This document shows, piece after piece, positions 5,639 to 60,800 of a stretch of DNA of 64,000 nt; position 1 is the first letter of the stretch; each line of letters starts with the position of its first letter. Source of the DNA: Euprymna scolopes (lineage: Eukaryota); the NCBI GenBank assembly GCA_053919585.1, contig CM132806.1. One strand, given 5' to 3'. The notes beneath the pieces are model-generated. The model did not search any database. It saw nothing but the letters and a program-made list of their open reading frames with translations, and was not told the DNA's origin. A program made the translations under genes and the position numbers.

Positions 5639-7057
5639 TTCTGATTTCGTTTATCAACGTCTCTCTGGAAAGGGATGGGATTCATTTCCAGAGAATTTCC
5701 TTTACTCCCGGCTTCCAACCAGGAGCTTCAAAGATCAAGGGTTTTCCTAAGGATGTTGGTGGCACTTATAATTGAAGGACACCTAACACATCGGGGATTT
5801 GTAGTTTTTTTTCAATTGTGCTTCCAGACGACTTGATACTACTCCTAGTGTACCAACTACGACCGGGATTATTTGTGTTTTACCCCCGTGTATACGCCTT
5901 ATCTCCAAGGCCAATGGAGCATAATTGCTCCACTTCTCATTCTCCTTCTCTCTCACATTCGTATCCCAGGGTACTGAGAAGTTTACAATCTGCTAGTTTT
6001 TTTTTAAACCTTGTAAATGACGTCCAAATCCGGACGATTATGTTCCAATTGCTTGGTCGTTATGAAACTTTTGTCCCACCATGCATCTACCTTGCCAGCC
6101 TCACTTGTTCTCATTTCATCAGGCACCTCCTCAAACCATTTTCCAGCACACTTCACCCCAACCCTCTTACACACCTCTGAATATATCCGGAGTCGCATGC
6201 TATCGTTTCTTTTGCGGTACTCTCTTAGCCAATCCTCTACACCCTGCTGCAAGGTGCGCAATTGACTCTGAATTCTTACCACAAATCCGGCATTCTCCAG
6301 CAATTTCCTCTCCTAGAACCACTTTTTTGAGCAATCGTGTTCCTAATGCCTGCTCTTGTGATGCGCAAACAAAAGCTTCAGTACTCTTAGCCAGATAGCC
6401 AGCACTAAGCCATTGCCATGATATTTCATCAGCCACTTCTGCTATATCCTGGAAGAACCTTCCATGCATTCTCTTCCTAGCCAGTTCCTCTGCCCTTTCT
6501 CTATCCATACGTTTCACATAATCAGTCTTAGTCTCACATAATTCCACTTCATTGGCCACAACCTTAAGCATCCACTCCCCACTTCTAACCACATGCCCTT
6601 TCAACGACATCTTCTCGGTTCTAACACAATCTTTTACACTTTTCAATCCTCTCCCATCATCTTTCCTCTTTTGACACAGCCTTGCTACACTACTTCGAAT
6701 GTGAAATATACTAAACATTGCTAAAACGTTTCTTGTTTTGATATCCACGGCATGCAAATCCTTGTCAGACCATTCTAAAATTACCGCACTGTATCTCAAA
6801 ACGCTGACTGCCCATGCATTTACTGCTTTCATTAGGTTTCCTCCATACAGTTTCGACTTTGCAATTAGGTTCACCCTTCTAAGATACTCCTTCCTGACTT
6901 TTTCCTTCATTTCTTTGTTCATGATGCTTACACCCTCAAACACTCTCAAATACTCATACACCGTATTTTCTATTTCTCTCATGATTTCTCCATTTGGCAG
7001 CACTATTCCATTCGAATGAACCTTTACTCTTCTTTTCATCACGAGCACAACACATTT
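5639..7057 (-). mobile_element. 5'-truncated R4/Dong-clade non-LTR retrotransposon (RT C-terminus, CCHC, restriction-like endonuclease)
   Basis: KCVVLVMKR...GIVLPNGE...YEYL...AVNAWAVSVLRYSA; CRICGKNSESIAHLAAGC; WWDK...HNRPDL endonuclease motif; stop at 5728-5730; short 3' UTR; (TAA)n-type repeats on both flanks. Confidence 0.88.
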
Positions 7058-7082
7058 ACTACTACTACTACTACTAATAATG

Positions 7083-7119
<37 letters not shown>

Positions 7120-8841
7120 TTTGAATGTGCAATATAGGTTTCATTCATTTACAGCAGCTAAGTAGCGATACAGAATCCTGTTTTAGTCATGTATGTATGA
7201 TGAACACATGTGATAACTGGACAAATTAAGCTCATTGCATCATAGATTAAAACAATAGTAAATTATGTATTCGCACTTATACGATTCACGTACATGGTTT
7301 CTCCACAAAATCAGGATAAAACCATGGAATATGATTTAGATTTATTAATACCATCTATAAATTCCATGAAATTTATTATTTGAATGTCACATCATTTCAA
7401 ACATTTTGTCCTGTTTGAGATTATAATCACGTATTGCTACATATGAAAGTTAAACATATATTAAACAATGGCAAGCAAGAAAAACAATTTAAAATTAAAA
7501 TCTGTAGAATCTATTCACTGTATCATAATCAAAAAGAAGACCCGAAAAAATCTTAATTAAGTCAGCATTAATATAATTTATTAGACACATTCATCTCAGT
7601 GATATATTTTTATTTTGTAAATAAACGTGTTTTACTACTAATAAGGGAAAATATAATTTGTCATATGTTCACAAATCATTAAAATCATATACGTGAGTTA
7701 AATATTCGGGAAAACAATTATACAAAACAACACAAAAACTGGATTAAAAATGAGTAACACAATAGAATTATCTAAACTATGACAACGCCCGAAATGTTAA
7801 ATAAAAAGCTAAAATGCGGAAACCAAAAATCATAAGGTTAAGAACTGCCGTGAATTTAAAATAAAAATATGAAAAAAATATATAAAAAGTATATAATACA
7901 AGTCTAGTAGGACTAAAGCTCCAATATTCAAAATTGACACTTCATTGTTTATCTATGTTTAAAGGGGATGATGGAATAGTTTGGAGGGTTATTGCAACTA
8001 AAATATGTGGCTAGTCATAAATAAAAGTGTAATTACCGTTTTTAATCCAAACCTATTTGAAAATATTACTGAACGAGGTTTTCACGCCCTCAAACATGCA
8101 GAATATGTTACTCAGATTCAAGATTACGTTTTGCTTGTAAGGAGCACTCACTTAGAAATAATTATAAGAAAATTACTATTGGGAAAATAAAACATTAATA
8201 ACAAATAATACAGCGACCTATGATACTGGAAACAGAAAGGAAACCAAATAATAAGTTAATTCGGAAGATGAACTGACAATAATTCAAATACGGTGTTGCA
8301 TTTGAAAACGCTTAAATAAATACGATTCAAAAATCTGTATTTTAGTCATGTGTTTATTCATAGCTCACCGGTGACAAAAGACATTGCACGTTTGCTGAAA
8401 GCATCAGCAACACACGTGTGTGAAAGATATTGTGTCTTCATATTTGTAGCCAATATATGAATCTGGATGTAATTGTTAAAAATATAACAATTTAATGCAC
8501 ACAATGTGTTCGTCAGCCGGCGATCTACCCGGGAAAATTAAAAAATTTAGTCGGAAACAATTTGATTAATAACTGTGATGCCATCGGTCACAGTATTACG
8601 TCTCTTGGCTCTAATATTATTAATTGTAAATTTTTAGCTATGTGTTTTCCTATAACAACTAATATTTGCTACTCAATAAGTTTGATGTTTACTCCGACAT
8701 CTTATTGATCTGTACTGACATTTTCGTTGGGGCGGAAACCATCGTACATCTAACTTGCTGCTGATAATAAATTTTGAATCAGAAATGTTATAATTCTGTT
8801 TAATTATTAAGCGTAACACACATACAGAAACAAATGTACAC

Positions 8842-19050: not shown

Positions 19051-19576
19051 ATAAAAGGGGCAATGATAGAATCCCGTCCCGAGATATACAGCAGCAGTAG
19101 GGGGATTTATTGCTGATATATACACTAGCCGGAGACAAGACTTTAAAAACAACATTTTAAAAATCAACATGTATGATTGTACAGACAAACTATTTCAAGC
19201 AAGGATACTAGGTGTTATAATATTAACGAAGCATATAATATAATAAATAGCAAGGAAGCAGAAAAAACATGTATGAAAATTGCCTATGAACTGAAAGAAA
19301 TAAAAAACGCTACTAAGGCAAATGCCATATCGACAATTAAAGCTAGACTGGAGATTATCTTAACTCGGGAATATAGAAGAATAAATATGATTCATAGATT
19401 ATGAATAAGGCAATATTTGTGAACGCAAAGACATAAATAGCTAAAAAAAATAAGGAGAAACGTCCACACAAGTACCCAAGTAAACCCAATGAAACAGCGA
19501 GATCTAATCCTCCCCGTATATGATGAAGTGGAAATACAACAAAAATACCGATAGAATATTATACACGCATAATAAA

Positions 19577-19896
19577 TATCGGATTTTAACCGACTGAAGG
19601 GGGGGGCGGCGTTTCTGCAACTCAACGGCTAAACCTGAACTCGACGTAGAAGGAAAAAACAATGAATCTCTTAACTTGTGTGGAGAATCACACATCAACG
19701 ATAGGGGTGTTTTATAACCCACAAGTTGATGCTATGCAACGTTCAGTCCTACCCACGTGGTGGACAACAAACTACTACTACTACTATAAAATCAGTCGAC
19801 CAAGCACTTTTTAAACCTTTTGCTTGAACCACTGCCTCCCAGAATTCCACTGCCTCCCCCCTCCACATCGAGTTCCGGTCAGTAATAATTACCACA
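19577..19896 (-). repeat. 3' LTR of the BEL/Pao element (320 bp)
   Basis: Matches the 5' LTR with about 11 substitutions (hand count). It lacks the 122 bp equivalent to 25781-25902, and its terminal CA is mutated to TA. It is preceded on the minus strand by a short purine-rich GATATGGGAATG. Confidence 0.92.
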
Positions 19897-20038
19897 CATT
19901 CCCATATCAAAAAAAAAAAAAAGAAAAACGAAAAAAAGAAAAATGTCTTTTACGGGATGTGAGATAGGGAAAAGAGAAGGGAATTCATCTTCTAGTTACA
20001 GTTTGCTTGAGACCTTCACCTGGAATTTCTGGTTCTTT

Positions 20039-20299
20039 TTAGACCCCTAACAAACTGGGTCTACCCCGACGCCTTGGTCTGCAAGTTAGACAATACCATT
20101 GTTCTTCTTGGTGTGCATCTACCAGGCCCACACAACCAAAGTGGAACCAGTCATTACACTGATCACAAGCCACCATAGGTCTGAAATCTTCTGGTTTATC
20201 ACATGCAGGGCAAATCAAGATTCTAACACACTCATCAGGTCGGGGCGATATATTTTGATCTGGCACATCCTCTGTTTCATGAAGAATTTCATTATCCAC
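20039..20299 (-). pseudogene. C-terminal extension of the BEL polyprotein: C4HC3 PHD finger (20081-20212) and AT-hook (20054-20080)
   Basis: CPAC-x11-CDQC-x4-H-x2-C-x13-CLTC followed by RPRRRGRPS. Same frame as the integrase tail (20344-20299 = 15 codons), separated only by TGA at 20345-20347, and inside the LTRs. Confidence 0.9.
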
Positions 20300-21900
20300 A
20301 TTTTCAGAAAGAGAATTAATCTCCAGAGGAAATAAATGGTTGATTCAATGGGTTAATGTAGCTCCATTTCCTTTTCTCACTCTTGCTGAACGAACCAACC
20401 CATCCTTTCCTTCAATCAACTCCAGGACTTCACCTATAGACCAAAATGGTCTAGTTTTAAGAGGGTCCTTTATTAACACTATGTCACCCTTTTTGATGGC
20501 ATTATCAAAGGAAGGGTCAGATAACTCAAGAGTTCTTTCACTCAGGCTCAACAGGTAATCTTCGTGCCACATCTTTCTAAACTTTTCTAAACTTTCTTCA
20601 CGAAGACGGAGCGTTATCTTTAACTCGATCCTGCTAAGTGGCTCTGTTAGTCCCAGTTCTTCATTGTCCAATCTTATCATTAAACCTTGACCCACATTTG
20701 GATTAATGAGAGAGTTGGGAGTTGGGCAATCCATTTCATTAGAGCTTTTATAATCAGAGGACGACTATTAATGGCACGCTGGATATCTGATAACATGGTT
20801 AATAAACCAAAATAGACAACCTTTCCCCTTCCTATAGTTTTGTAGAGACAGGATTTAACTGTCTTGATTGTCCTTTCCCAAGTACCTCCATACCAAGCTG
20901 AATAAAGTGGAATAGTACAATGCTTAAGGTGATAAGAACCAACCTTCTCCTTGAACTCATCAGTGATCAATCCCTGATCAATTATTTTGGCTGCAGAAAT
21001 GAAAGTCCTTGCGTTGTCAGAGTAGAGGTGAGAGGGGATTCCATTCGCATTTGTGAAACGAATAAAGGCCTGCAAGAATGAAGATACACTCATATCTGGG
21101 ACTAGTTCTATGTGAACCGCTCTGATAGCCATGCACGTGAAGATGAGGATATACATTTTATAGTCCTTCACTTCTCCCTTAACCCAGATGTGACTGGTGT
21201 AATCCACACCGGTAAAGAGATATGGTCTTACCAAATTTACTCTAGAGCTAAGAAGGTCTGTTGCATTCGGTGTCGAGAAGGCAGTGGCATTGTATCTTTT
21301 GCACTTGGCACAAGTGCTCACAATTTTTTTAACAGCCTGTCTGGCTTGTGGTATCCAATATCCTTTTAACCTTATTTCATTTTAGGTTGTTGCCAAACCC
21401 AAATGTTGGTTTCTCTGATGAGTGTCCGTTATGATCAAATCGGTTAAATGGTGTCTTTTTCCTAAAATAATTGGATTTTGCACTTCATAGGAATGCCATT
21501 CCGAGCCACCTATCCTTCCTCTTGAACGAATGATATTGGAGGTATCCAGGAATAGGTTTAAGTTTTTCACTAATTTTGGTGGACTCTTACCTTCAGGATC
21601 CAACAAAAAATCCAACTCTGCAGCAAAAGATTCCCCTTGCATCAACTTTATCAAATAGATTTTTGCCAGAAGGTGATTGTCCTCACTTCTCTTCAACGTT
21701 TTCGTGACAAACTTGAAAACCAAAGTCATTACAGTAACTAATCTGTTGAAGTTGGAAAATCTTTCTACAGAGACTATAGGGTAACTTTCGTTGTGTCTTG
21801 TAAACAAATTCATTGCAGGATGAATGCATTCCTTTTGTTCTTCCAGGAGACAACCTAACTCGAGCTTGTTCCACCGAATGTCTTCCTGCTTTATCCATGC
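20300..21900 (-). pseudogene. BEL/Pao integrase (HHCC zinc finger, DDE core, DUF5641-like tail), disrupted
   Basis: HQRNQHLG...CAKCKR zinc finger; TGVDYT, YSDNART and GGTWERTI catalytic motifs; tail FRKMWHEDYL...GDIVLIKD...GKDGLVRSARV...H*INHLFPLE. Confidence 0.92.
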
Positions 21901-24250
21901 AGGCCCTTCATACAAATAGGAAAGGTGTTCCTGAAATATTTTAAAGGAAAGTCCTCTTGTGATGTAATCGACTAGATTCTCCTTAGTTGGCACGTATTGG
22001 AAACTCAGCTCCAACTTCATTTCCGACCTGATTGTTGCAGACATTTGCGTTATATCTTGCAGCCTGTTGCGCGCAAAGATGTTTTTTGTGGTTATCGACT
22101 TTGATAGTATCCAAGCCAATACCACTTGAGCGTCCGTTAGAACATATATTTTTTCTATCAGGGAGTTCTTCAAGGCTTCCTTTATAAAGGGAAAACATTT
22201 TTATGCTAGAAACACTGACAAAAGCTCCAAAGTGGGTAGAGATTTACCTTTTAAGGGTGCTACTTTTGCTTTAGCAAACACCAGTGCAGACTGTCCATCT
22301 TGTACAGCATATGCTGAAAAGCCGTATGCACTTTTGGAGGCATCACAATATAGGAATAATTATAGGGGCTTATTGTCGTTTAGGACTCTCCTTGGAAATG
22401 ATACAGCGCCCAATTCTGTTAAGTCCTTTGCCAGAGCTTTCCAGGGTTTTTTTGACTCTTCTGAAACTTCATCATCCCAATCCAACTTTTGCCTCCAAAG
22501 TTCTCCTATCAGCATTCTGCTCCCTTCTGTCATTGGAAGATATAGGGACAAGGGATCAAATATTTTGGAAACTTCAGACAGCATTTTCCTTTTTGTTGAT
22601 GCGGTTACATCGCATTGGTGCGAACAGACCTTCATAGTATCATGTTGAGGGTTGTACAAATACCCTAAAACTTTCTCCACACAAGAATCAAAACCTGACA
22701 GAGTTCCATCTGCCGCTATTTTTTCTTGTAACACTGCACTGTTCGAGTTACAGGATTGTATCTCAAAGTTACCCTCTTGTATTCGTTCCTTCACCGCTGA
22801 GTATAACGTAGATAGAGTATCTACATCATTTCCTGTTTTCACCAAATTGTCAACATAAAAGTTGACCTGAGTACTTGGGAATATTCATCTGCAGGAAATT
22901 TTTCTGCATGATATTTTAAGACATAATTTAATATAAATGAACTTGCATTGAAACCGAATAAGATGGTAGAGTATCTGTAACAATGCAAGTTGTCGCCTTT
23001 TTTCAAGAAGAAACAAAACCGATTGCAGTCCTTTTCTAGCTCTAGACGAATCATAAGGAATGCTTTCCTTATGTCGGCCAATAATACATATTTGTTGGCC
23101 CTAAAGCGAATCAACAGTTCTAACATGTCTCCCATTAGGTTGACTCCTGGATAGGCTGCCTCATTCAAAGATGTAGCATTTGCCCCCTTGTAGGAACAAA
23201 TGAACACAGTCGTTTGATCAGTCAGTTTTAGTACCGGTCTGTGCGGAATCCATATGTACTTTTGAAAGTCTTCTGGAGTCACTGTTATTTCCTCTATAAT
23301 CCCTTCGTCTTCCTGTTGTCTAAAGACGTCTACGTATTGGTCATAGAGGCCTTTCTTCTCCAGGTCTTTAACTACTCTTTCCAGTATTCTAAGAGCAGCA
23401 TTGTAGTAAGAAGGCACAGACTTCACTTTGTCTTCATACCATGGCAGCTGTACATGGTATCGGCCATCTTTGTAGGATATAGTGTTCCTAAACTTTTGTA
23501 CCATCTCTTCATCCACGGTGGAGAATTCCTCTGTGATAGGTAACCCTAGTGAGTCCATGCTAAACATGTTTCCTAGTCTTCTCTGGACGTTTCCTTCTTC
23601 AAACCAAGCTTTTAACGGGTATGGATATTTCTCCTCTGGGTTCAGCACAAAATTAATTTTGTACTCTGAAAGTGGAGGTGTTTTGTCCAACAAGGAGGTA
23701 TAATTAAATTTTGCCCCTCTCTTCACTTTGTGTCTTGGTTTTAACTGATTCTCATACATGAATCAACGGCTGTTATCAAAGGGTACAAGCCCTCTCGGTG
23801 TGGAAAAAGCGGTTCCATACATGCAGGGTACGATTTCAAATGGTTCTAGGAATTGAATGGCGTCAACTCCCAACAGCCCCTCAATTTTAATATAACTGTC
23901 CCGGGAATTGTACTTAGTTGCTAACTGATGTTGTTTCAGGTTTTTAATTATCTGCGGAAGCTCCAGTAACTCATGAGAAAGACTCAAATGACTGGACAGA
24001 ATTTGAAGAGAGTGAACTTTCTCAGGGATAAGTCTTAACTCCACTGTGGCCTCTTTAAAAGGTCTTGTCTCTGAGCCCAAAAAGGTTTTCACTTCCAACC
24101 TACTTTCTTTAGCTGTAGAAATGCAATTCAGTTTTTCCAGCACAGAGGTATCCAAGTAGGTCCTTTGGCTTCCGGTGTCCAGGAGACAATTTATTTCCAA
24201 CTGACTATTTCCCTTTCCTACTACTATGTTGATTACAGGAGACATGAAAC
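21900..24250 (-). pseudogene. pol: BEL/Pao Pol: aspartic protease, reverse transcriptase and RNase H, disrupted
   Basis: Protease LLDTGSQRTY. RT motifs IPHRPV, SLNEAAYPGVNL, ADIRKAF and FGFNASSFIL, plus FYVDN at ~22850 across a frameshift. RNase H region: SKIFDPL, WRQKLDWDD, CDASKSAYG, TDAQVVLAW. Confidence 0.92.
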
Positions 24251-24309
24251 CATAGCTGTAATCATTCGTATGTACACAGGTGTCCACATGCACCTTGCCT
24301 CTCTTGTCT

Positions 24310-25638
24310 GGGAACATTGCTGTCACGTGGCCCTTAACAGTGCAGCTGCTACAGCTACTATATTTAGCTGTTCTCAAAGGGCACATTGCTCCCCTATGTG
24401 TCTTTTTTAGGCATCTAAAACACAGCCAAAGTTCTTTGCACCTTGTAATCCGGGCTTCATGGGAGGTGTAGCAGGGACAATTTTCCGAAGAATGTTCATG
24501 CTTTTTACAAAACTCACATTTTTGTGGTTTTGATTCCACTTTGGCATTGAAAGACTTCACGGAGGAATGTGATTCTTCTTCACATTCTTTCCTAAGTCTA
24601 GGTGGGGGGGGCTCAGCTTGGTCACAGGGTACTGTTCAGGTTTTCTATTAATCAAAAAAGGATTAATAATTTCTGGTGTCTTCAACAGGATTATTGATAA
24701 TGTTGGATAGGTTTTTCCAGAAATCCTGATTAGTTCATTTTTTATGTTGGATGGTAATTTTGCAAACAATACCTGAGAAATTATTATGGTACCTGCCGAC
24801 TGGTCATCATATAAGTCGCAGATGTATGATGCTCTAAGTTCCAATACGTCCGCCTGCGTTTTTATCATAAAGTCCTTCAACCCCACCGAGACTTTTGGAC
24901 TCTCCAAGCGAAAATCTAATATACCTTGGATTATTTCGCCACGTATTTCTTCCTCATCCAAGTATTGTTCTTTCAACAATTTTAGAGCCACTGGGTAACT
25001 GTCTTCGGAGACGGACAAGTGGTCAATAAGTTGAAGGGCTCTAACCCCAAGAGAACACCTCAAAAATATAGCTTTCCTGATGCCGATAGTATAGACATTG
25101 CACAATTCTCAAACTTAGTGAGAAAGTCCTTAAAACCTCTTCTATTTCTTTCAAAATCCCTTCCACTGAAATGTGGCTCTTTCAGTTTGATTTTAAAAGG
25201 TTCTACTGAAAAGGAAGAATGTGCGGTTGGGTTGAAGCATTTGGTTGCTTCTGGGATTCTAGTGGCTTCTTGACTATGAGGGTTGAAGGTTGGTTCAATG
25301 TTGGTGGACCTCGTATCTTCTATAGGGACCTCTGGAGTATTTCCTTCACTGACTGTCCGTACAACTCCCAGTCTCTGTCGTATCTCTCTCTTAAATCTAA
25401 ACGAAGCTTGAAAAAGTTCAGCAAGCGATTCAGCTTCCTCTTCTGCAGCCAGTTGCTCCTCCATACTCCAAGACACACACTCTAGCTCCTCTAGCCATCC
25501 TTCTATATCCTTTTCAAAAGATAAAAACACATTCAAGGATAGAGGTTCTTCTTCCATACCCACCACAGTCGCCCTTATCTTTCTTTGAAGATGGGATAGC
25601 CTTCTCTCTAGTTCCCTCCGAGTAATAGGGTCGTTCAT
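24310..25638 (-). pseudogene. gag: BEL/Pao Gag (DUF1759-like region plus three Cys-His knuckles), frameshifted
   Basis: FSG...FKDFLTKFEN...KAIFLRCSLGVRALQLIDHL...YPVALKLLKEQY, then CEFCKKHEHSSENC, CFRCLKKTHRGAMC and CSSCTVKGHVTAMF, the triple knuckle typical of BEL Gag. Confidence 0.88.
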
Positions 25639-25671
25639 TTTTTTTTTTTTTTTTTGCGTTACGTTGCAAAG

Positions 25672-25983
25672 TGTCGGATTTTAACAAACTGAAGGGGGGG
25701 CGTTTCTGCAACTCAACGGCTAAACCTGAACTCAACATAGAAGGAAAAAACAATGAAACTCTTAACTTGTGTGGAGAATCCTTCTCGGCTTTTCTCGGCT
25801 AACTGGAGTTGCAACGTATTGCCTCGTTGCTTACAACGACAAATTGTCTTTGTAATAGTAACTGTGAAACGTGTAACTTGACTAAACAAAAAAGTCCAAC
25901 TAACACATCAACGATAGGGGTGTTTTATAACCCACAAGTTGATGCTATGCAAAGTTCAGTCCGACCCACGTGGTGGACAACAA

Positions 25984-26014
<31 letters not shown>

Positions 26015-26124
26015 TAAAATCAGTCGACCAAGCGCTTTTTAAACCTTTTGCTTGAACGACTGCCTCCCAGAATTCCAATGCCTCCCCCCTCCACATCGAG
26101 TTCCGGTCAGTAATAATTACCACA
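25672..26124 (-). repeat. 5' LTR of the BEL/Pao element (453 bp)
   Basis: Reads TGTGGT...CCGACA on the minus strand (TG..CA termini), is a direct repeat of 19577-19896, and contains a (TAG)n tract. Confidence 0.93.
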
Positions 26125-26349
26125 TAAACTTCAATTTCTTTTCGTACATATCATGCACAACATTTTGCATCAACCGGCAAATAAAAGCACCAGAAATATA
26201 TATGGTGGCGGCATCAGTTCTGTTTGGTACAACAAAAATTATCATGAACAGTGAAGAAAGAACTTAGAGAGTTTAGCACTAACCATAAGAAGATGGTAAG
26301 GACTGCGGCTAAAATGTTAAGTATATTTTTAGAAAATGAGAAATCAATA

Positions 26350-57800: not shown

Positions 57801-60800
57801 CATTTGAATAAATACACATAACCTTGGAATTAATAATATAACTAGTGATATAATTTGAATATATTAACATACATTTGGAATTAATAATATAACTAATGAT
57901 ATAATTTAATATATGAACATAAATTTGGAATTAATAATATAACTAATGATAAAATTTGAATATATGAACATGAACGTTGAATTAATAATATAACTTATGA
58001 TACAATTTGAATACATAATAATAAACGTGGAATTAATAATATATATAATGATAACATTTGAATATATAATAATGAACGTGGAATTAATAATATAACTAAT
58101 GATAAAATTTGAATATATGAACATGAACGTGGAATTAATAATATAACTTATGATACAATTTGAATACATAATAATGAACGTGGAATTAATAATATAACTA
58201 ATGATAACATTTTAATATATAATAATGAACGTGGAATAAATAATATAACTAATGATAAAATTTGAATATATAAACATGAACGTGGAATTAATAATATAAA
58301 ATATGATACAATTTGAATACATAATAATGAACCTGGAATTAATAATATAACTAATGATAAAATTTGAATATATAATAATGAACGTGGAATTAATAATATA
58401 ACTAATGATAAAATTTGAATATATGAACATGAACGTGGTATTAATAATATAACTTACGATACAATTTGAATACATAATAATGAACGCGGAATTAATAATA
58501 TAACTAATGATAAAATTTGAATATATGAACATGAACGTGGAATTAATAATATAACTTATGATACAATTTGAATACATAATAATGAACCTGGAATTAATAA
58601 TATAACTAATGATAAAATTTGAATATATAATAATGAACGTGGAATTTATAATATAACTAATGATAAAATTTGAATACATGAACATGAACATGGAATTAAT
58701 AATATAACTTATTATATAATTTGAATACATAATAATGAACCTGGAATTAATAATAAAACTAATGATAAAATTTGAATATATAATAATGAACGTGGAATTT
58801 ATATTATAACTAATGATAAAATTTGAATATATGAACATGAACGTGGAATTTATATTATAACTTATGATACAATATGAATACATAATAATGAACGTGGAAT
58901 TAATAATAAAACTAATGATAAAATTTTAATATATAATAATGAACGTGGAATTAATAATATAACTAATGATAAAATTTGAATATATGAACATGAACGTGGA
59001 ATTAATAATATAACTTATGATACAATTTGAATACATAATAATGAACGTGGAATTAATAATATAACTAATGATAAAATTTTAATATATAATAATGAACGTG
59101 GAATTAATAATATAACCAATGACAAAATTTGATTATATGAACATGAATTTGGAATTAATAATATAACCAATGATAAAATTTGAATATATAAACATGAACG
59201 TGGAATTAATAATATAACTTATGATAAAATTTGAATACATAATAACGAACGTGGAATTAATAATATAACTAATGATAACATTTTAATATATAAATATGAA
59301 CGTGGAATTAAAAATATAACTTATGATACAATTTGAATATATAATAATGAACCTGGAATTAATAATATAACTTATAATACAATTTGAATACATAATAATG
59401 AACGTGGAATTAATAATATAACTAATGATAACATTTTAATATATAAACATGAACGTGGAATTAATAATATAACTTATGATACAATTTTAATATATAAACT
59501 CAATCGCGGAATTAATAATACAACGAGTGATAAAATTTTAATATATAAACATAAACTAATAATATAAATATTGATAAAACTCGAATACATGAACATAAAC
59601 ATGGAATTAATAGTATAATAGTGATAAAATATATAAAAATAACCCTGGAATTAATAAAATAATTAGTTATACGATTAGCATATATCAAAATAAACTTCGA
59701 ATTAATGATATAACTAGTAAACAAATTGTAAATTATAAACATAAACTTGAAAATAATAGTATAACTAGTGAGAAAATCTCCATAAATAGATAAAAAAGTG
59801 GAATTAATAATATAACTAGTGATGAAATTGGATTATATAAACATAAACTGAGAATATATAATATAACTAATGATAAAATTTTAATACATAAACATAAACT
59901 TGAAATTAATAATATAACTAGTGATGCAATTTGAATATATAACCATAAACTGGGAATTAGTAATATAACTTGTGATAAAATTTGAATATATAAACATAAA
60001 CTTAGAAATAATTATATAATAAGTGAGAAAATCTGAATAAAAACATAAACGAGGAATTAATATTATAACTAGTGATCAAATTTAATATGTACACATAAAC
60101 GTGGAATTCATAATATAACTAATGATAAAATTTGAATATATAAACATGGACTTTTAATTAATAATATAACTAGTGATAAAATTATATATAAGAAAATATA
60201 ATATAATATAACATAAGAACATCTTATTAAAGAAAAATAAAGGTTGAATTGCTATTATAACTAGTGATTATTTTAAATATATAAACATAAACCTGAGAAT
60301 TGATTATATAATTAGTGATAAAATTTGAATACATGAACATAAACGTGGAATTAATAATATAACTAATGCTAAAATTTGAATATATAAACCTAAACTTGGA
60401 ATAAATAATATAACTAGTGATAACATTTGAATATATAAGCATAACCTTAGAATTAATAATATAACTAGTGATAAAATTGTAAAACATGAACATAAACTTA
60501 GAATTAATAATATAACTAGTGATAAAATTTGAATACATGAACATAAACTTGGAATTGTTAATATCACTAGTGATTAAAGTCGAATATATCAAAATGAACT
60601 TGGAATTAATAATATAACTTATGATAAAATTTGAATATATAAACATAAACTGTGAATTAATATTATAACTAATGATACAATTTTAATATATAAACATAAA
60701 CTTGGAAATAATAATATAACTAGTGATAAAATGTGAATGTATAATCATAAAGTGTGAAAATATAATATTACTTGTGAGAAAATCTGAATAAAGAAACATA

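What the first reader, a model, noticed from the sequence alone, without database searches (positions are those of the whole stretch)
20039..20734. BEL/Pao integrase fused to a TAF3-like PHD finger and AT-hook: candidate chromatin-reading integration module
Seen: the integrase tail reads ...GATLTH*INHLFPLEINSLSENVDNEILH... in one frame into CPACDKPEDFRPMVACDQCNDWFHFGCVGLVDAHQEEQWYCLTC-RPRRRGRPS, ending ~140 bp before the 3' LTR. The single TGA (20345-20347) sits inside the conserved BEL 'xIxxLxPLE' motif, so it looks like post-insertion damage. All eight C4HC3 ligands are intact. Established: chromoviruses (Ty3/Gypsy) carry a histone-reading chromodomain at this position; PHD fingers read H3 tails; RGRP is the AT-hook core. 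From memory, the finger aligns nearly gap-free to the H3K4me3-binding TAF3 PHD (WICPGCNKPDDGSPMIGCDDCDDWYHWPCVGI...QWFCPKC). The PHDs I know in BEL/Pao lie at the Gag N-terminus; I know of no description of a post-integrase PHD plus AT-hook in this group, though that may be a gap in my knowledge. Inference: the lineage captured a host reader domain and may tether integration to marked nucleosomes next to AT-rich DNA, convergently with chromoviruses.
Basis: partly seen in the sequence, partly recalled or inferred. Interest (0 to 1): 0.9.

Follow-up and report, generated by a model that had tools for sequence, protein, structure and literature searches.

The report
Retrotransposon integrase with TAF3-like PHD finger
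This is a dead copy of a BEL/Pao retrotransposon whose family has fused a histone-mark-reading finger, copied from the transcription factor TAF3, to the end of its integrase, probably to steer where new copies insert; I found no description of this design.

Summary
Window 19577-26124 (minus strand) is a 6.5-kb BEL/Pao LTR retrotransposon. Its Pol ends in integrase-DUF5641, a linker, a C4HC3 PHD finger and an RRRGRPS tail, all in one frame broken by one TGA.

That stop is private to this copy: 0 of 29 other copies have it, and 8 are open over all 231 codons.

The finger is clearly TAF3-type:
- Its best solved-structure match is the TAF3 PHD (E 2.6e-19, 72 bits); the next family, ING, scores 43 bits.
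- The model superposes on TAF3 at 1.2 A with 60% identity.

The family keeps the TAF3 H3K4me3 cage. The PHD evolves under constraint between subfamilies (dN/dS 0.30), like the integrase tail (0.26).

PHD-bearing elements form one Pol clade (support 100). They occupy at least 2,000 places in this 5.9-Gb genome and occur on contigs from other organisms.

Histone binding and guided integration are untested. The AT-hook reading is unconfirmed, although the tail is conserved and target sites are AT-rich.

The window copy itself is dead: 4 frame changes, 5 stops, and the first cage tryptophan lost.

The scan has noted this architecture 17 times on other DNA of this genome. I found no paper describing it. 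I class it as a new variant of a known kind.

The parts
19577..26124 (-). Whole BEL/Pao LTR retrotransposon copy (6,548 nt), non-functional
   Evidence: LTR pair. Pfam domains in BEL/Pao order. 4 frame changes and 5 in-frame stops against a same-family copy with a long open frame.
25672..26124 (-). 5' LTR (453 nt, TG...CA)
19577..19896 (-). 3' LTR (320 nt). It lacks 122 nt and five TAG repeats present in the 5' LTR. 11 mismatches in 316 aligned nt (3.5%).
26125..26128 (-). Target-site duplication TTTA, upstream copy
   Evidence: one search compared
19573..19576 (-). Target-site duplication TTTA, downstream copy
24557..25105 (-). Gag region (DUF1759)
   Evidence: Pfam E 2.7e-06
23763..24560 (-). 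Aspartic protease region
   Evidence: Weak Pfam hits to gag-asp_proteas and Asp_protease_2, below cut-off. Position agrees with family copies.
22839..23759 (-). Reverse transcriptase region (no Pfam hit in this damaged piece)
   Evidence: Aligns to residues 353-941 of a same-family Pol. RVT_1 is found at the matching place in sister families.
22360..22845 (-). Pao-specific Peptidase_A17 region
   Evidence: Pfam E 2.8e-16
20680..21321 (-). Integrase catalytic core (rve)
   Evidence: Pfam E 1.5e-04, below cut-off in this copy. rve and Integrase_H2C2 are found in sister copies.
20321..20734 (-). Integrase C-terminal domain DUF5641, ending in the FPLE motif
   Evidence: Pfam E 2.5e-11. Alignment with relatives.
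20345..20347 (-). In-frame TGA, private to this copy
   Evidence: 0 of 29 other copies. table 3: another letter at 20346 in all four runs.
20219..20320 (-). Acidic, variable linker between DUF5641 and the PHD
   Evidence: dN/dS 0.55 with a wide interval.
20081..20218 (-). TAF3-type PHD finger (codons 173-218). All eight zinc ligands are present, but the first cage tryptophan is lost in this copy.
   Evidence: Pfam PF00628 E 9.3e-10. TAF3 PHD E 2.6e-19. Foldseek top five hits are TAF3, 1.2 A. Copy table.
20042..20080 (-). Basic C-terminal tail RPRRRGRPSLLGV (RGRP core at 20057-20068). AT-hook-like; predicted disordered.
   Evidence: The tail is conserved as RRGRPSLLP in distant relatives. pLDDT 50-59. 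Pfam AT_hook not matched.
20039..20041 (-). Pol stop codon, shared by 26 of 29 other copies

Best explanation
The window holds a decayed copy of a BEL/Pao (Belpaoviridae) LTR retrotransposon. It belongs to a clade in which a PHD finger derived from the host TFIID subunit TAF3 was inserted after the integrase C-terminal domain (DUF5641). The finger is followed by a short basic RRGRPSLL tail, and the whole is translated as the last part of one Gag-Pol polyprotein.

Shown: the architecture, its single origin within the sampled Pol tree, its conservation, and purifying selection on it.

Inferred mechanism: the finger stays attached to integrase in the intasome and binds the N-terminal tail of histone H3 trimethylated at K4. 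It would use the same W/W/M cage as TAF3, while the disordered basic tail adds a contact to AT-rich DNA or to the nucleosome. New copies would thus be tethered to nucleosomes at active promoters. This would be the mirror image of chromoviruses, whose integrase chromodomain reads H3K9 methylation.

This particular copy can no longer do any of that.
For: Architecture:
- Pfam finds DUF1759, RVT_1, Peptidase_A17, Integrase_H2C2/rve, DUF5641 and PHD in single ORFs of 1,771-1,886 aa in sister families, and in the same order in pieces in the window.
- The stop is private to this copy, and 8 of 29 other copies are fully open over the 231 codons.

TAF3 origin:
- phmmer against PDB gives TAF3 PHD at E 2.6e-19 (72 bits); the next family, ING1, scores 43 bits.
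- The AF2 model has a core pLDDT of 82-92.
- The Foldseek top five are all TAF3 PHD structures, rmsd 1.2 A, 60% identity.
- The best host hits in 1.8 billion representatives carry Bromo_TP plus PHD, which is the TAF3 architecture.

Reader residues:
- The TAF3 cage is W868, W891, M882 and D877, with E905 among the R2 contacts; the D890/W891 mutant abolishes H3K4me3 binding (PMC12238850, PMC4429956).
- Family copies carry W, W, M, E and E at the aligned positions.
- The first W is kept in 26, the second W in 27 and the M in 26 of the 29 other copies.

Selection:
- Between the two subfamilies, dN/dS is 0.30 for the PHD (bootstrap 0.14-0.73) and 0.26 for DUF5641.
- Among young copies it is about 1, as expected for decay after insertion.

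Single clade:
- The eight PHD-bearing Pols group with SH-aLRT 100 on a tree built without the PHD columns, nested among PHD-less BEL/Pao.

Breadth:
- At least 2,017 candidate PHD places in this genome, with 150 of 150 scored places significant.
- At least five families.
- Contigs L031 and L049 match this genome at only 67-72% DNA identity at best, so they come from other organisms or from lineages not retained here.

Tail:
- RRGRPSLLP is kept in lineages only 41-46% identical over DUF5641-PHD.

Target sites:
- The 4-nt duplications have 17% GC against 32% background (p = 0.001).
- 3 of 22 insertions lie in (TA)n runs, which cover 1.4% of the window.

Precedent:
- An ING2 PHD fused to the LEDGF integrase-binding domain redirected HIV-1 integration towards transcription start sites (PMC8149907).

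Complex prediction of the PHD with H3 residues 2-45:
- Verdict 'weak support'. Score 0.35, best control 0.01.
- Runs agree in at least 88% of contacts; partner pLDDT is at least 51.
- In calibration the mark was reached by 51 of 78 solved complexes and 2 of 108 mismatched pairs, but only 5 of the 78 solved ones scored 0.60 or below.
- The pass may come from the model's memory of TAF3-H3 structures.
Against: - No binding or integration-site data exist. I could not test enrichment near promoters or H3K4me3.
- The window copy lies in AT-rich sequence with no recognisable gene nearby. One old insertion says little either way.
- D889, one of the two R2 contacts in TAF3, is N in this family, and D877 is E.
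- Two of the five families (L046 and L044 types) lack the basic tail, so the tail is not essential to the design.
- Pfam AT_hook did not match.
- The AT-rich target preference is modest, and many integrases without an AT-hook show one.
- Transcription is not proven. Contigs from RNA libraries cover the element, but DNA carry-over cannot be excluded.
Confidence: 0.6

Rival explanations
1. The finger is functional but serves a step other than target choice. It might hold the pre-integration complex on chromatin through mitosis or nuclear entry. It might compete with or mimic TAF3 at promoters to favour the element's own transcription. Or it might bind nuclear phosphoinositides through the basic tail, as the TAF3 PHD and its polybasic region do.
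For: In TAF3 a polybasic stretch follows the PHD and binds phosphoinositides independently of H3K4me3 (PMC4429956). The element's tail sits at the same position (alignment). Selection shows function but not which function.
Against: The domain is fused to integrase, where every characterised retroelement reader or tether acts on target choice: the chromovirus chromodomain, the MLV IN tail with BET, and LEDGF (PMC6673714, PMC8149907). The cage residues for K4me3 are kept.
Confidence: 0.25
2. The RRGRPSLL tail is not a captured AT-hook. It would instead be a remodelled version of the basic [S/G]-R-P-x-R-x-A-A motif that ends most PHD-less BEL/Pao integrases, or a nuclear localisation signal, or an arginine anchor for the nucleosome acidic patch. 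On this reading the PHD was inserted in front of an existing tail.
For: About 16 of the 24 PHD-less Pols shown carry an R-P-x-R basic motif about 20 residues from the C-terminus, after an acidic linker, as the PHD clade does. Pfam AT_hook was not matched. Conservation extends beyond the GRP core into SLLP, which is not part of the AT-hook definition.
Against: R-G-R-P flanked by arginines is the canonical AT-hook core (general knowledge). Target duplications are AT-rich and some insertions lie in (TA)n. The motifs are too short to establish homology.
Confidence: 0.45
3. The finger reads the H3 tail irrespective of K4 methylation, or reads a non-histone ligand. The element would then gain general chromatin affinity rather than promoter targeting.
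For: Two TAF3 contact positions differ (D877 to E, D889 to N; alignment read). PHD specificity shifts with few changes (general knowledge).
Against: Both cage tryptophans and the floor methionine are nearly invariant across 21 TE and TAF3 fingers. All close structural matches are H3K4me3 readers.
Confidence: 0.12
4. The PHD reading frame is a host exon or an assembly chimera next to a retrotransposon, not part of the element.
For: None beyond the high similarity to a host protein domain.
Against: The PHD lies inside the LTRs, 142 nt before the 3' LTR. It is found at the same place in 29 of 29 other copies on many chromosomes, and on independent contigs from other samples.
Confidence: 0.01

Closest known systems
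Chromoviruses (Ty3/Gypsy elements with an integrase C-terminal chromodomain, e.g. Tf1, MAGGY; Gao et al. 2008 as cited in PMC6673714)
   Same: A histone-tail reader domain of host type is fused to the C-terminus of the integrase of an LTR retrotransposon. It is conserved across a whole clade and thought to tether integration to marked nucleosomes.
   Different: The superfamily differs (BEL/Pao, not Gypsy). The fold differs (zinc-binding PHD, not chromodomain). The predicted mark differs (H3K4me3 of active promoters, not H3K9me of heterochromatin). The donor is identifiable here (TAF3).
CopiaMBD elements of arthropods (PMC6673714)
   Same: An LTR retrotransposon clade captured a host chromatin-reader domain, with restricted taxonomic range and a traceable host origin.
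   Different: The captured domain there is a methyl-CpG-binding domain in Copia, and binding was shown experimentally. Here nothing has been measured.
PHD fingers in other transposable elements: CR1 non-LTR elements, Rehavkus DNA transposons, REM1 and Chlamys elements of Chlamydomonas (PMC8557442, PMC6673714)
   Same: A PHD finger serves as an accessory domain of a transposon protein.
   Different: Those fingers sit in other element classes and other positions (ORF of LINEs, inside RT or EN of Penelope-like elements). They are not reported as TAF3-type or as integrase C-terminal fusions in BEL/Pao.
TAF3 PHD finger (TFIID subunit 3; PDB 2K16/2K17, 5WXH, 5C13)
   Same: 56-60% identity over about 50 residues for the window family and about 70% for a sister family by my count. 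Same fold at 1.2 A. Same W/W/M cage. A basic stretch follows the last cysteine.
   Different: There is no histone-fold (Bromo_TP) domain and no TFIID context. D877 is E and D889 is N. The tail is RRGRPSLL instead of the lysine-rich phosphoinositide-binding region.
Engineered LEDGF(IBD)-ING2 PHD fusions for HIV-1 retargeting (Ferris et al. 2010, reviewed in PMC8149907)
   Same: An H3K4me3-reading PHD coupled to an integrase complex moves integration towards transcription start sites. This is the behaviour predicted here.
   Different: That system is artificial, acts through a tethering factor rather than a direct fusion, and uses a lentiviral integrase.

Membership tests
BEL/Pao (Belpaoviridae) LTR retrotransposon | Two LTRs (TG...CA) flanked by a short target-site duplication | tested here: met
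   LTRs at 25672-26124 and 19577-19896 with a 4-nt TTTA duplication. The 3' LTR now ends TA.
BEL/Pao (Belpaoviridae) LTR retrotransposon | Pao-specific Pfam families (Peptidase_A17, DUF1759 Gag, DUF5641 after the integrase core) in the order Gag-PR-RT-RH-IN | tested here: met
   for the window pieces; for sister copies in single ORFs. The closest Pol relatives are BEL/Pao proteins.
PHD finger (PF00628) | C4HC3 zinc ligands with canonical spacing, and a Pfam score above the gathering cut-off | tested here: met
   38.8 bits against a cut-off of 24. All eight ligands are present in the window copy and, by my reading of the copy table, in 19 of 29 other copies.
TAF3-type H3K4me3-reading PHD | Closest sequence and structure match is the TAF3 PHD rather than another PHD family | tested here: met
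   72 bits against 43 bits for the next family. Foldseek ranks 1-5 are TAF3. A 47-column tree cannot resolve TE fingers from TAF3 fingers but separates both from KDM5/MLL fingers, support 100/99.
TAF3-type H3K4me3-reading PHD | Cage residues W868, W891, M882 and D877 (PMC12238850) | tested here: met
   The family carries W, W, M and E. In the window copy itself the first W is lost, so for this copy the feature is not met.
TAF3-type H3K4me3-reading PHD | Measured binding to H3K4me3 peptide | not testable with these tools
   Only a weak complex prediction with H3 residues 2-45: score 0.35, best control 0.01.
TAF3 (TFIID subunit 3) gene | N-terminal histone-fold / Bromo_TP domain | tested here: not met
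   No Bromo_TP in any element ORF. The finger is a captured domain, not a TAF3 gene.
AT-hook | G-R-P core flanked by basic residues | tested here: met
   The tail carries RRRGRPS in the window, and KRRRGRPS in distant relatives.
AT-hook | Match to the Pfam AT_hook model, or shown minor-groove binding to AT tracts | tested here: inconclusive
   No AT_hook hit at E up to 10 on three tails; short-motif models are insensitive. AT-rich target duplications are only indirect evidence.
Chromovirus | Ty3/Gypsy Pol with an integrase C-terminal chromodomain | tested here: not met
The resemblance is functional analogy only.

The most novel reading that the evidence does not exclude
A clade of BEL/Pao retrotransposons uses a TAF3-derived PHD finger on its integrase to read H3K4me3 and insert at active promoters. 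That would be the first natural retroelement integrase carrying its own reader of an active histone mark. A more distant BEL/Pao (P0080) also ends in a TAF3-like finger, joined differently, which hints that this capture happened more than once. The clade's spread to at least 2,000 places in a 5.9-Gb genome, probably a mollusc's, would then link chromatin-guided targeting to genome expansion.
Probability: 0.4. Interest if true: 0.82.

Novelty: new variant of a known kind. Interest (0 to 1): 0.66.

Why it matters
Where retroelements insert decides both their own survival and the damage they do. The known natural solutions are few:
- chromodomains that read heterochromatin;
- tethers to Pol III factors;
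- tethers to BET or LEDGF.

A directly fused reader of the active-promoter mark has so far existed only as a laboratory construct for retargeting lentiviral vectors. Here nature seems to have built it, from an identifiable host donor (TAF3), in a superfamily where no targeting module is known.

The case is directly testable. The finger is small and soluble. Its donor has solved complexes. The genome holds PHD-bearing and PHD-less BEL/Pao families side by side as internal controls.

Tried and rejected
1. A tree of the PHD fingers alone (33 fingers, 47 columns) was unresolved. TE and TAF3 fingers form one unresolved group, so neither a single capture nor the donor lineage can be read from the finger itself.
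2. I searched this genome for the host's own TAF3 PHD using a tunicate TAF3 finger. All 150 scored hits looked like transposon copies, and the most TAF3-like one (64% identity, L044) is also preceded by a DUF5641 end. The host TAF3 exon was not found.
3. The search for homologous proteins with the last 102 residues of a same-family Pol found nothing among long proteins. That search depends on shared words, so the blank means little.
Only 3' junctions were analysed.
5. Pfam AT_hook did not match the tails.
6. Looking up sample and project accessions in papers to name the source organisms of L031, L049, L050 and L052 found nothing. Cluster look-ups gave no names.
7. I considered and rejected that the PHD is a host exon beside the element.
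8. I considered that all public hits come from this species. That holds for L050 (96% identity) but not for L031 or L049 (67-72%).
The question it was meant to answer was settled by a copy-by-copy tally.
Full report
**What is at the coordinates**

The finding lies on the minus strand.

- Pfam places DUF5641, the C-terminal domain of BEL/Pao integrases, on 20348-20734 (E 2.5e-11).
- Pfam places a PHD finger on 20039-20299 (PF00628, E 9.3e-10, 38.8 bits against a cut-off of 24).
- Upstream, in the right order, lie rve, Peptidase_A17, an aspartic protease region and DUF1759 Gag.
- Direct repeats and an alignment define the LTRs at 25672-26124 and 19577-19896, flanked by a TTTA duplication. The element is therefore 19577-26124.
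- The Pol stop is 142 nt before the 3' LTR.

**State of this copy**

I compared it with a same-family copy that keeps a long open frame, used only as a ruler.

- The window copy has four frame changes, near 25070, 24606, 22860 and 20741. The last lies just upstream of the finding.
- It has five in-frame stops.
- Its LTRs differ at 11 of 316 aligned positions (3.5%), and the 3' LTR lacks 122 nt.
- It has lost the first of the two cage tryptophans of the finger.

It is a dead copy.

**Is the fusion real?**

The window's genome (5.9 Gb, 925 contigs) holds at least 178 candidate copies of the 696-nt stretch; I fetched 29 others. I compared them copy by copy and built no consensus.

- None of the 29 has a stop at codon 130.
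- Eight are open over all 231 codons.
- 26 end at the same stop.
- Contigs of four public runs all read another letter inside the TGA codon.

A protein search with a TAF3 finger found 2,017 candidate places, and all 150 scored were significant. Some lie in open frames of 1,798-1,904 codons that end with the finger. Three sister families show DUF1759, RVT_1, Peptidase_A17, Integrase_H2C2/rve, DUF5641 and PHD in one ORF. So the TGA is private damage, and IN-PHD is one protein in the family.

**What the finger is**

- Against all PDB sequences the best matches are the TAF3 PHD (E 2.6e-19, 72 bits). The next family, ING, reaches 43 bits.
- An AlphaFold model built on an alignment of 21 fingers has a core pLDDT of 82-92 and a disordered tail at 50-59.
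- Its five best Foldseek matches are TAF3 PHD structures, at 1.2 A and 60% identity.
- In a search of 1.8 billion representatives, the best host proteins carry Bromo_TP plus PHD, the TAF3 architecture. They come from mites and a tunicate.
- A tree of the fingers alone is unresolved. It separates TE and TAF3 fingers together from KDM5/MLL fingers, support 100/99.

**Reader residues**

In TAF3 the K4me3 cage is W868, W891, M882 and D877. R2 is held by D889 or E905, and the D890/W891 mutant loses H3K4me3 binding (PMC12238850, PMC4429956). By the alignment the family has W, W, M, E, N and E at these places.

Among the 29 other copies the first W is kept in 26, the second in 27 and the M in 26. Across 21 TE and TAF3 fingers the methionine, the second tryptophan, the histidine and four cysteines are invariant.

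A complex prediction of the finger with H3 residues 2-45 of this genome gave only weak support.
- Score 0.35, best control 0.01.
- Runs agree in at least 88% of contacts; partner pLDDT is at least 51.
- The mark was reached by 51 of 78 solved complexes and 2 of 108 mismatched pairs, but only 5 of those 78 scored 0.60 or below.
- It may reflect the model's memory of TAF3-H3 structures.

**Selection**

I computed pairwise Nei-Gojobori estimates between natural copies.

| Comparison | Region | dN/dS |
|---|---|---|
| Within the young subfamily | whole stretch | 0.98 (neutral decay) |
| Between the two subfamilies (dS about 0.2) | DUF5641 | 0.26 |
| Between the two subfamilies | PHD | 0.30 (bootstrap 0.14-0.73) |
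| Between the two subfamilies | 13-codon tail | 0.44 (interval includes 1) |

The finger has therefore been as constrained as the integrase domain it follows.

**History and range**

On a Pol tree built with the finger removed (35 proteins, 1,378 columns), the eight TAF3-PHD elements form one clade (SH-aLRT 100) nested among PHD-less BEL/Pao. This argues for one acquisition followed by diversification.

This genome has at least five families with the finger.

| Contig | Source | Best DNA identity to this genome |
|---|---|---|
| L050 | public contig | 96% (same or a close species) |
| L049 | ENA | 71-72% |
| L031 | JGI metagenome | 67% |

So the clade reaches beyond this species. None of the public proteins carries a name.

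A much more distant BEL/Pao, P0080, also ends in a TAF3-like finger (44% identity). It is joined 10 residues after the PLE motif and has no tail, so it may be a second capture.

Runs labelled 'mollusc metagenome' and 'invertebrate metagenome' hold the element. From the genome size and at least 46 very large contigs I guess a decapodiform cephalopod. This is inference, not a tool result.

**The tail**

RRGRPSLLP ends three of the five families here and also the foreign contigs, although DUF5641-PHD is only 41-46% identical between them. That argues for function.

It has the AT-hook core, but Pfam's AT_hook model does not match, and conservation extends into SLLP. Two families lack the tail.

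PHD-less BEL/Pao integrases mostly end with an acidic linker and a basic [S/G]-R-P-x-R-x-A-A motif. The tail may therefore be an ancestral feature in front of which the finger was inserted. TAF3 itself has a polybasic phosphoinositide-binding stretch after its finger.

As an indirect test I read the 3' junctions of 22 independent copies.
- The four bases after the LTR have 17% GC against 32% background (p = 0.001).
- Three insertions lie in (TA)n runs, which cover 1.4% of the window.

This fits an AT-hook but is not specific to one.

**Expression**

Contigs from oligo-dT and polyA RNA libraries cover 28-29 of 30 bins of the element. One 715-nt contig bridges the DUF5641-linker junction and reaches the first residues of the finger (20209-20922). 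A second contig of the same run, overlapping it by 30 nt, carries on across the finger into the 3' LTR (19848-20238). DNA carry-over cannot be excluded.

**Known or new**

PHD fingers are known accessory domains of other transposons: CR1, Rehavkus, REM1 and Chlamys (PMC8557442, PMC6673714). Reader domains on integrase are known from chromoviruses and CopiaMBD.

An engineered ING2-PHD tether redirects HIV-1 integration to start sites (PMC8149907).

Searches combining BEL/Pao, Belpaoviridae, TAF3, PHD and integrase found no description of this architecture. A survey of mollusc BEL/Pao does not mention a PHD. Subscription literature and Repbase could not be searched.

The scan's own notes list 17 earlier sightings on other DNA of this genome, and one follow-up reached the same reading.

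**Verdict**

The architecture, the TAF3 origin and the constraint are well supported. H3K4me3-guided integration is the most likely mechanism (about even odds) but is untested. I class this as a new variant of a known kind.

Noticed in passing
L052 (protein P0080, ENA metagenome contig): A distant BEL/Pao Pol (1,813 aa) also ends in a TAF3-like PHD finger, 44% identical to the window family's. It is joined only 10 residues after the PLE motif and has no basic tail. This may be a second, independent capture.
   Followed up: partly
Proteins P0003 and P0017 (short public contigs): Some relatives carry two TAF3-like PHD fingers in tandem after DUF5641. This matches an earlier scan note of tandem fingers in this genome.
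   Followed up: partly
C-termini of the 24 PHD-less BEL/Pao Pols shown: Most end with an acidic linker, a basic [S/G]-R-P-x-R-x-A-A motif and about 15 more residues. This looks like a conserved integrase tail motif, and I do not know of a description of it.
   Followed up: no
L011, just after the 3' LTR end: The LTR is followed directly by the sequence that follows the 5' LTR in the window copy (CTTTGCAACGTA...). Two elements therefore seem to sit in tandem sharing one LTR.
   Followed up: no
L020 and L021 (same contig, about 340 kb apart, opposite strands): Two copies share the same 3' flank and the same internal stop and deletion. This is a duplicated segment carrying one insertion, not two insertions.
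   Followed up: no
window 19771-19786 and 25984-26014: The LTR contains a (TAG)n microsatellite that differs by five units between the two LTRs of this copy. The 3' LTR also lacks 122 nt present in the 5' LTR and in most other copies.
   Followed up: partly
Proteins P0004, P0013, P0204 (mite TAF3): TAF3 proteins of several mites are predicted with two or three PHD fingers instead of one. This inflated their scores in my search.
   Followed up: no
L004/L051, L010, L027 3' junctions: Three of 22 insertions of this family lie inside (TA)n microsatellites.
   Followed up: partly
window 6200-7144 (-) and 58212-58883 (-): These are the only other ORFs above 150 aa in the window. Neither has a Pfam match.
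   Followed up: partly
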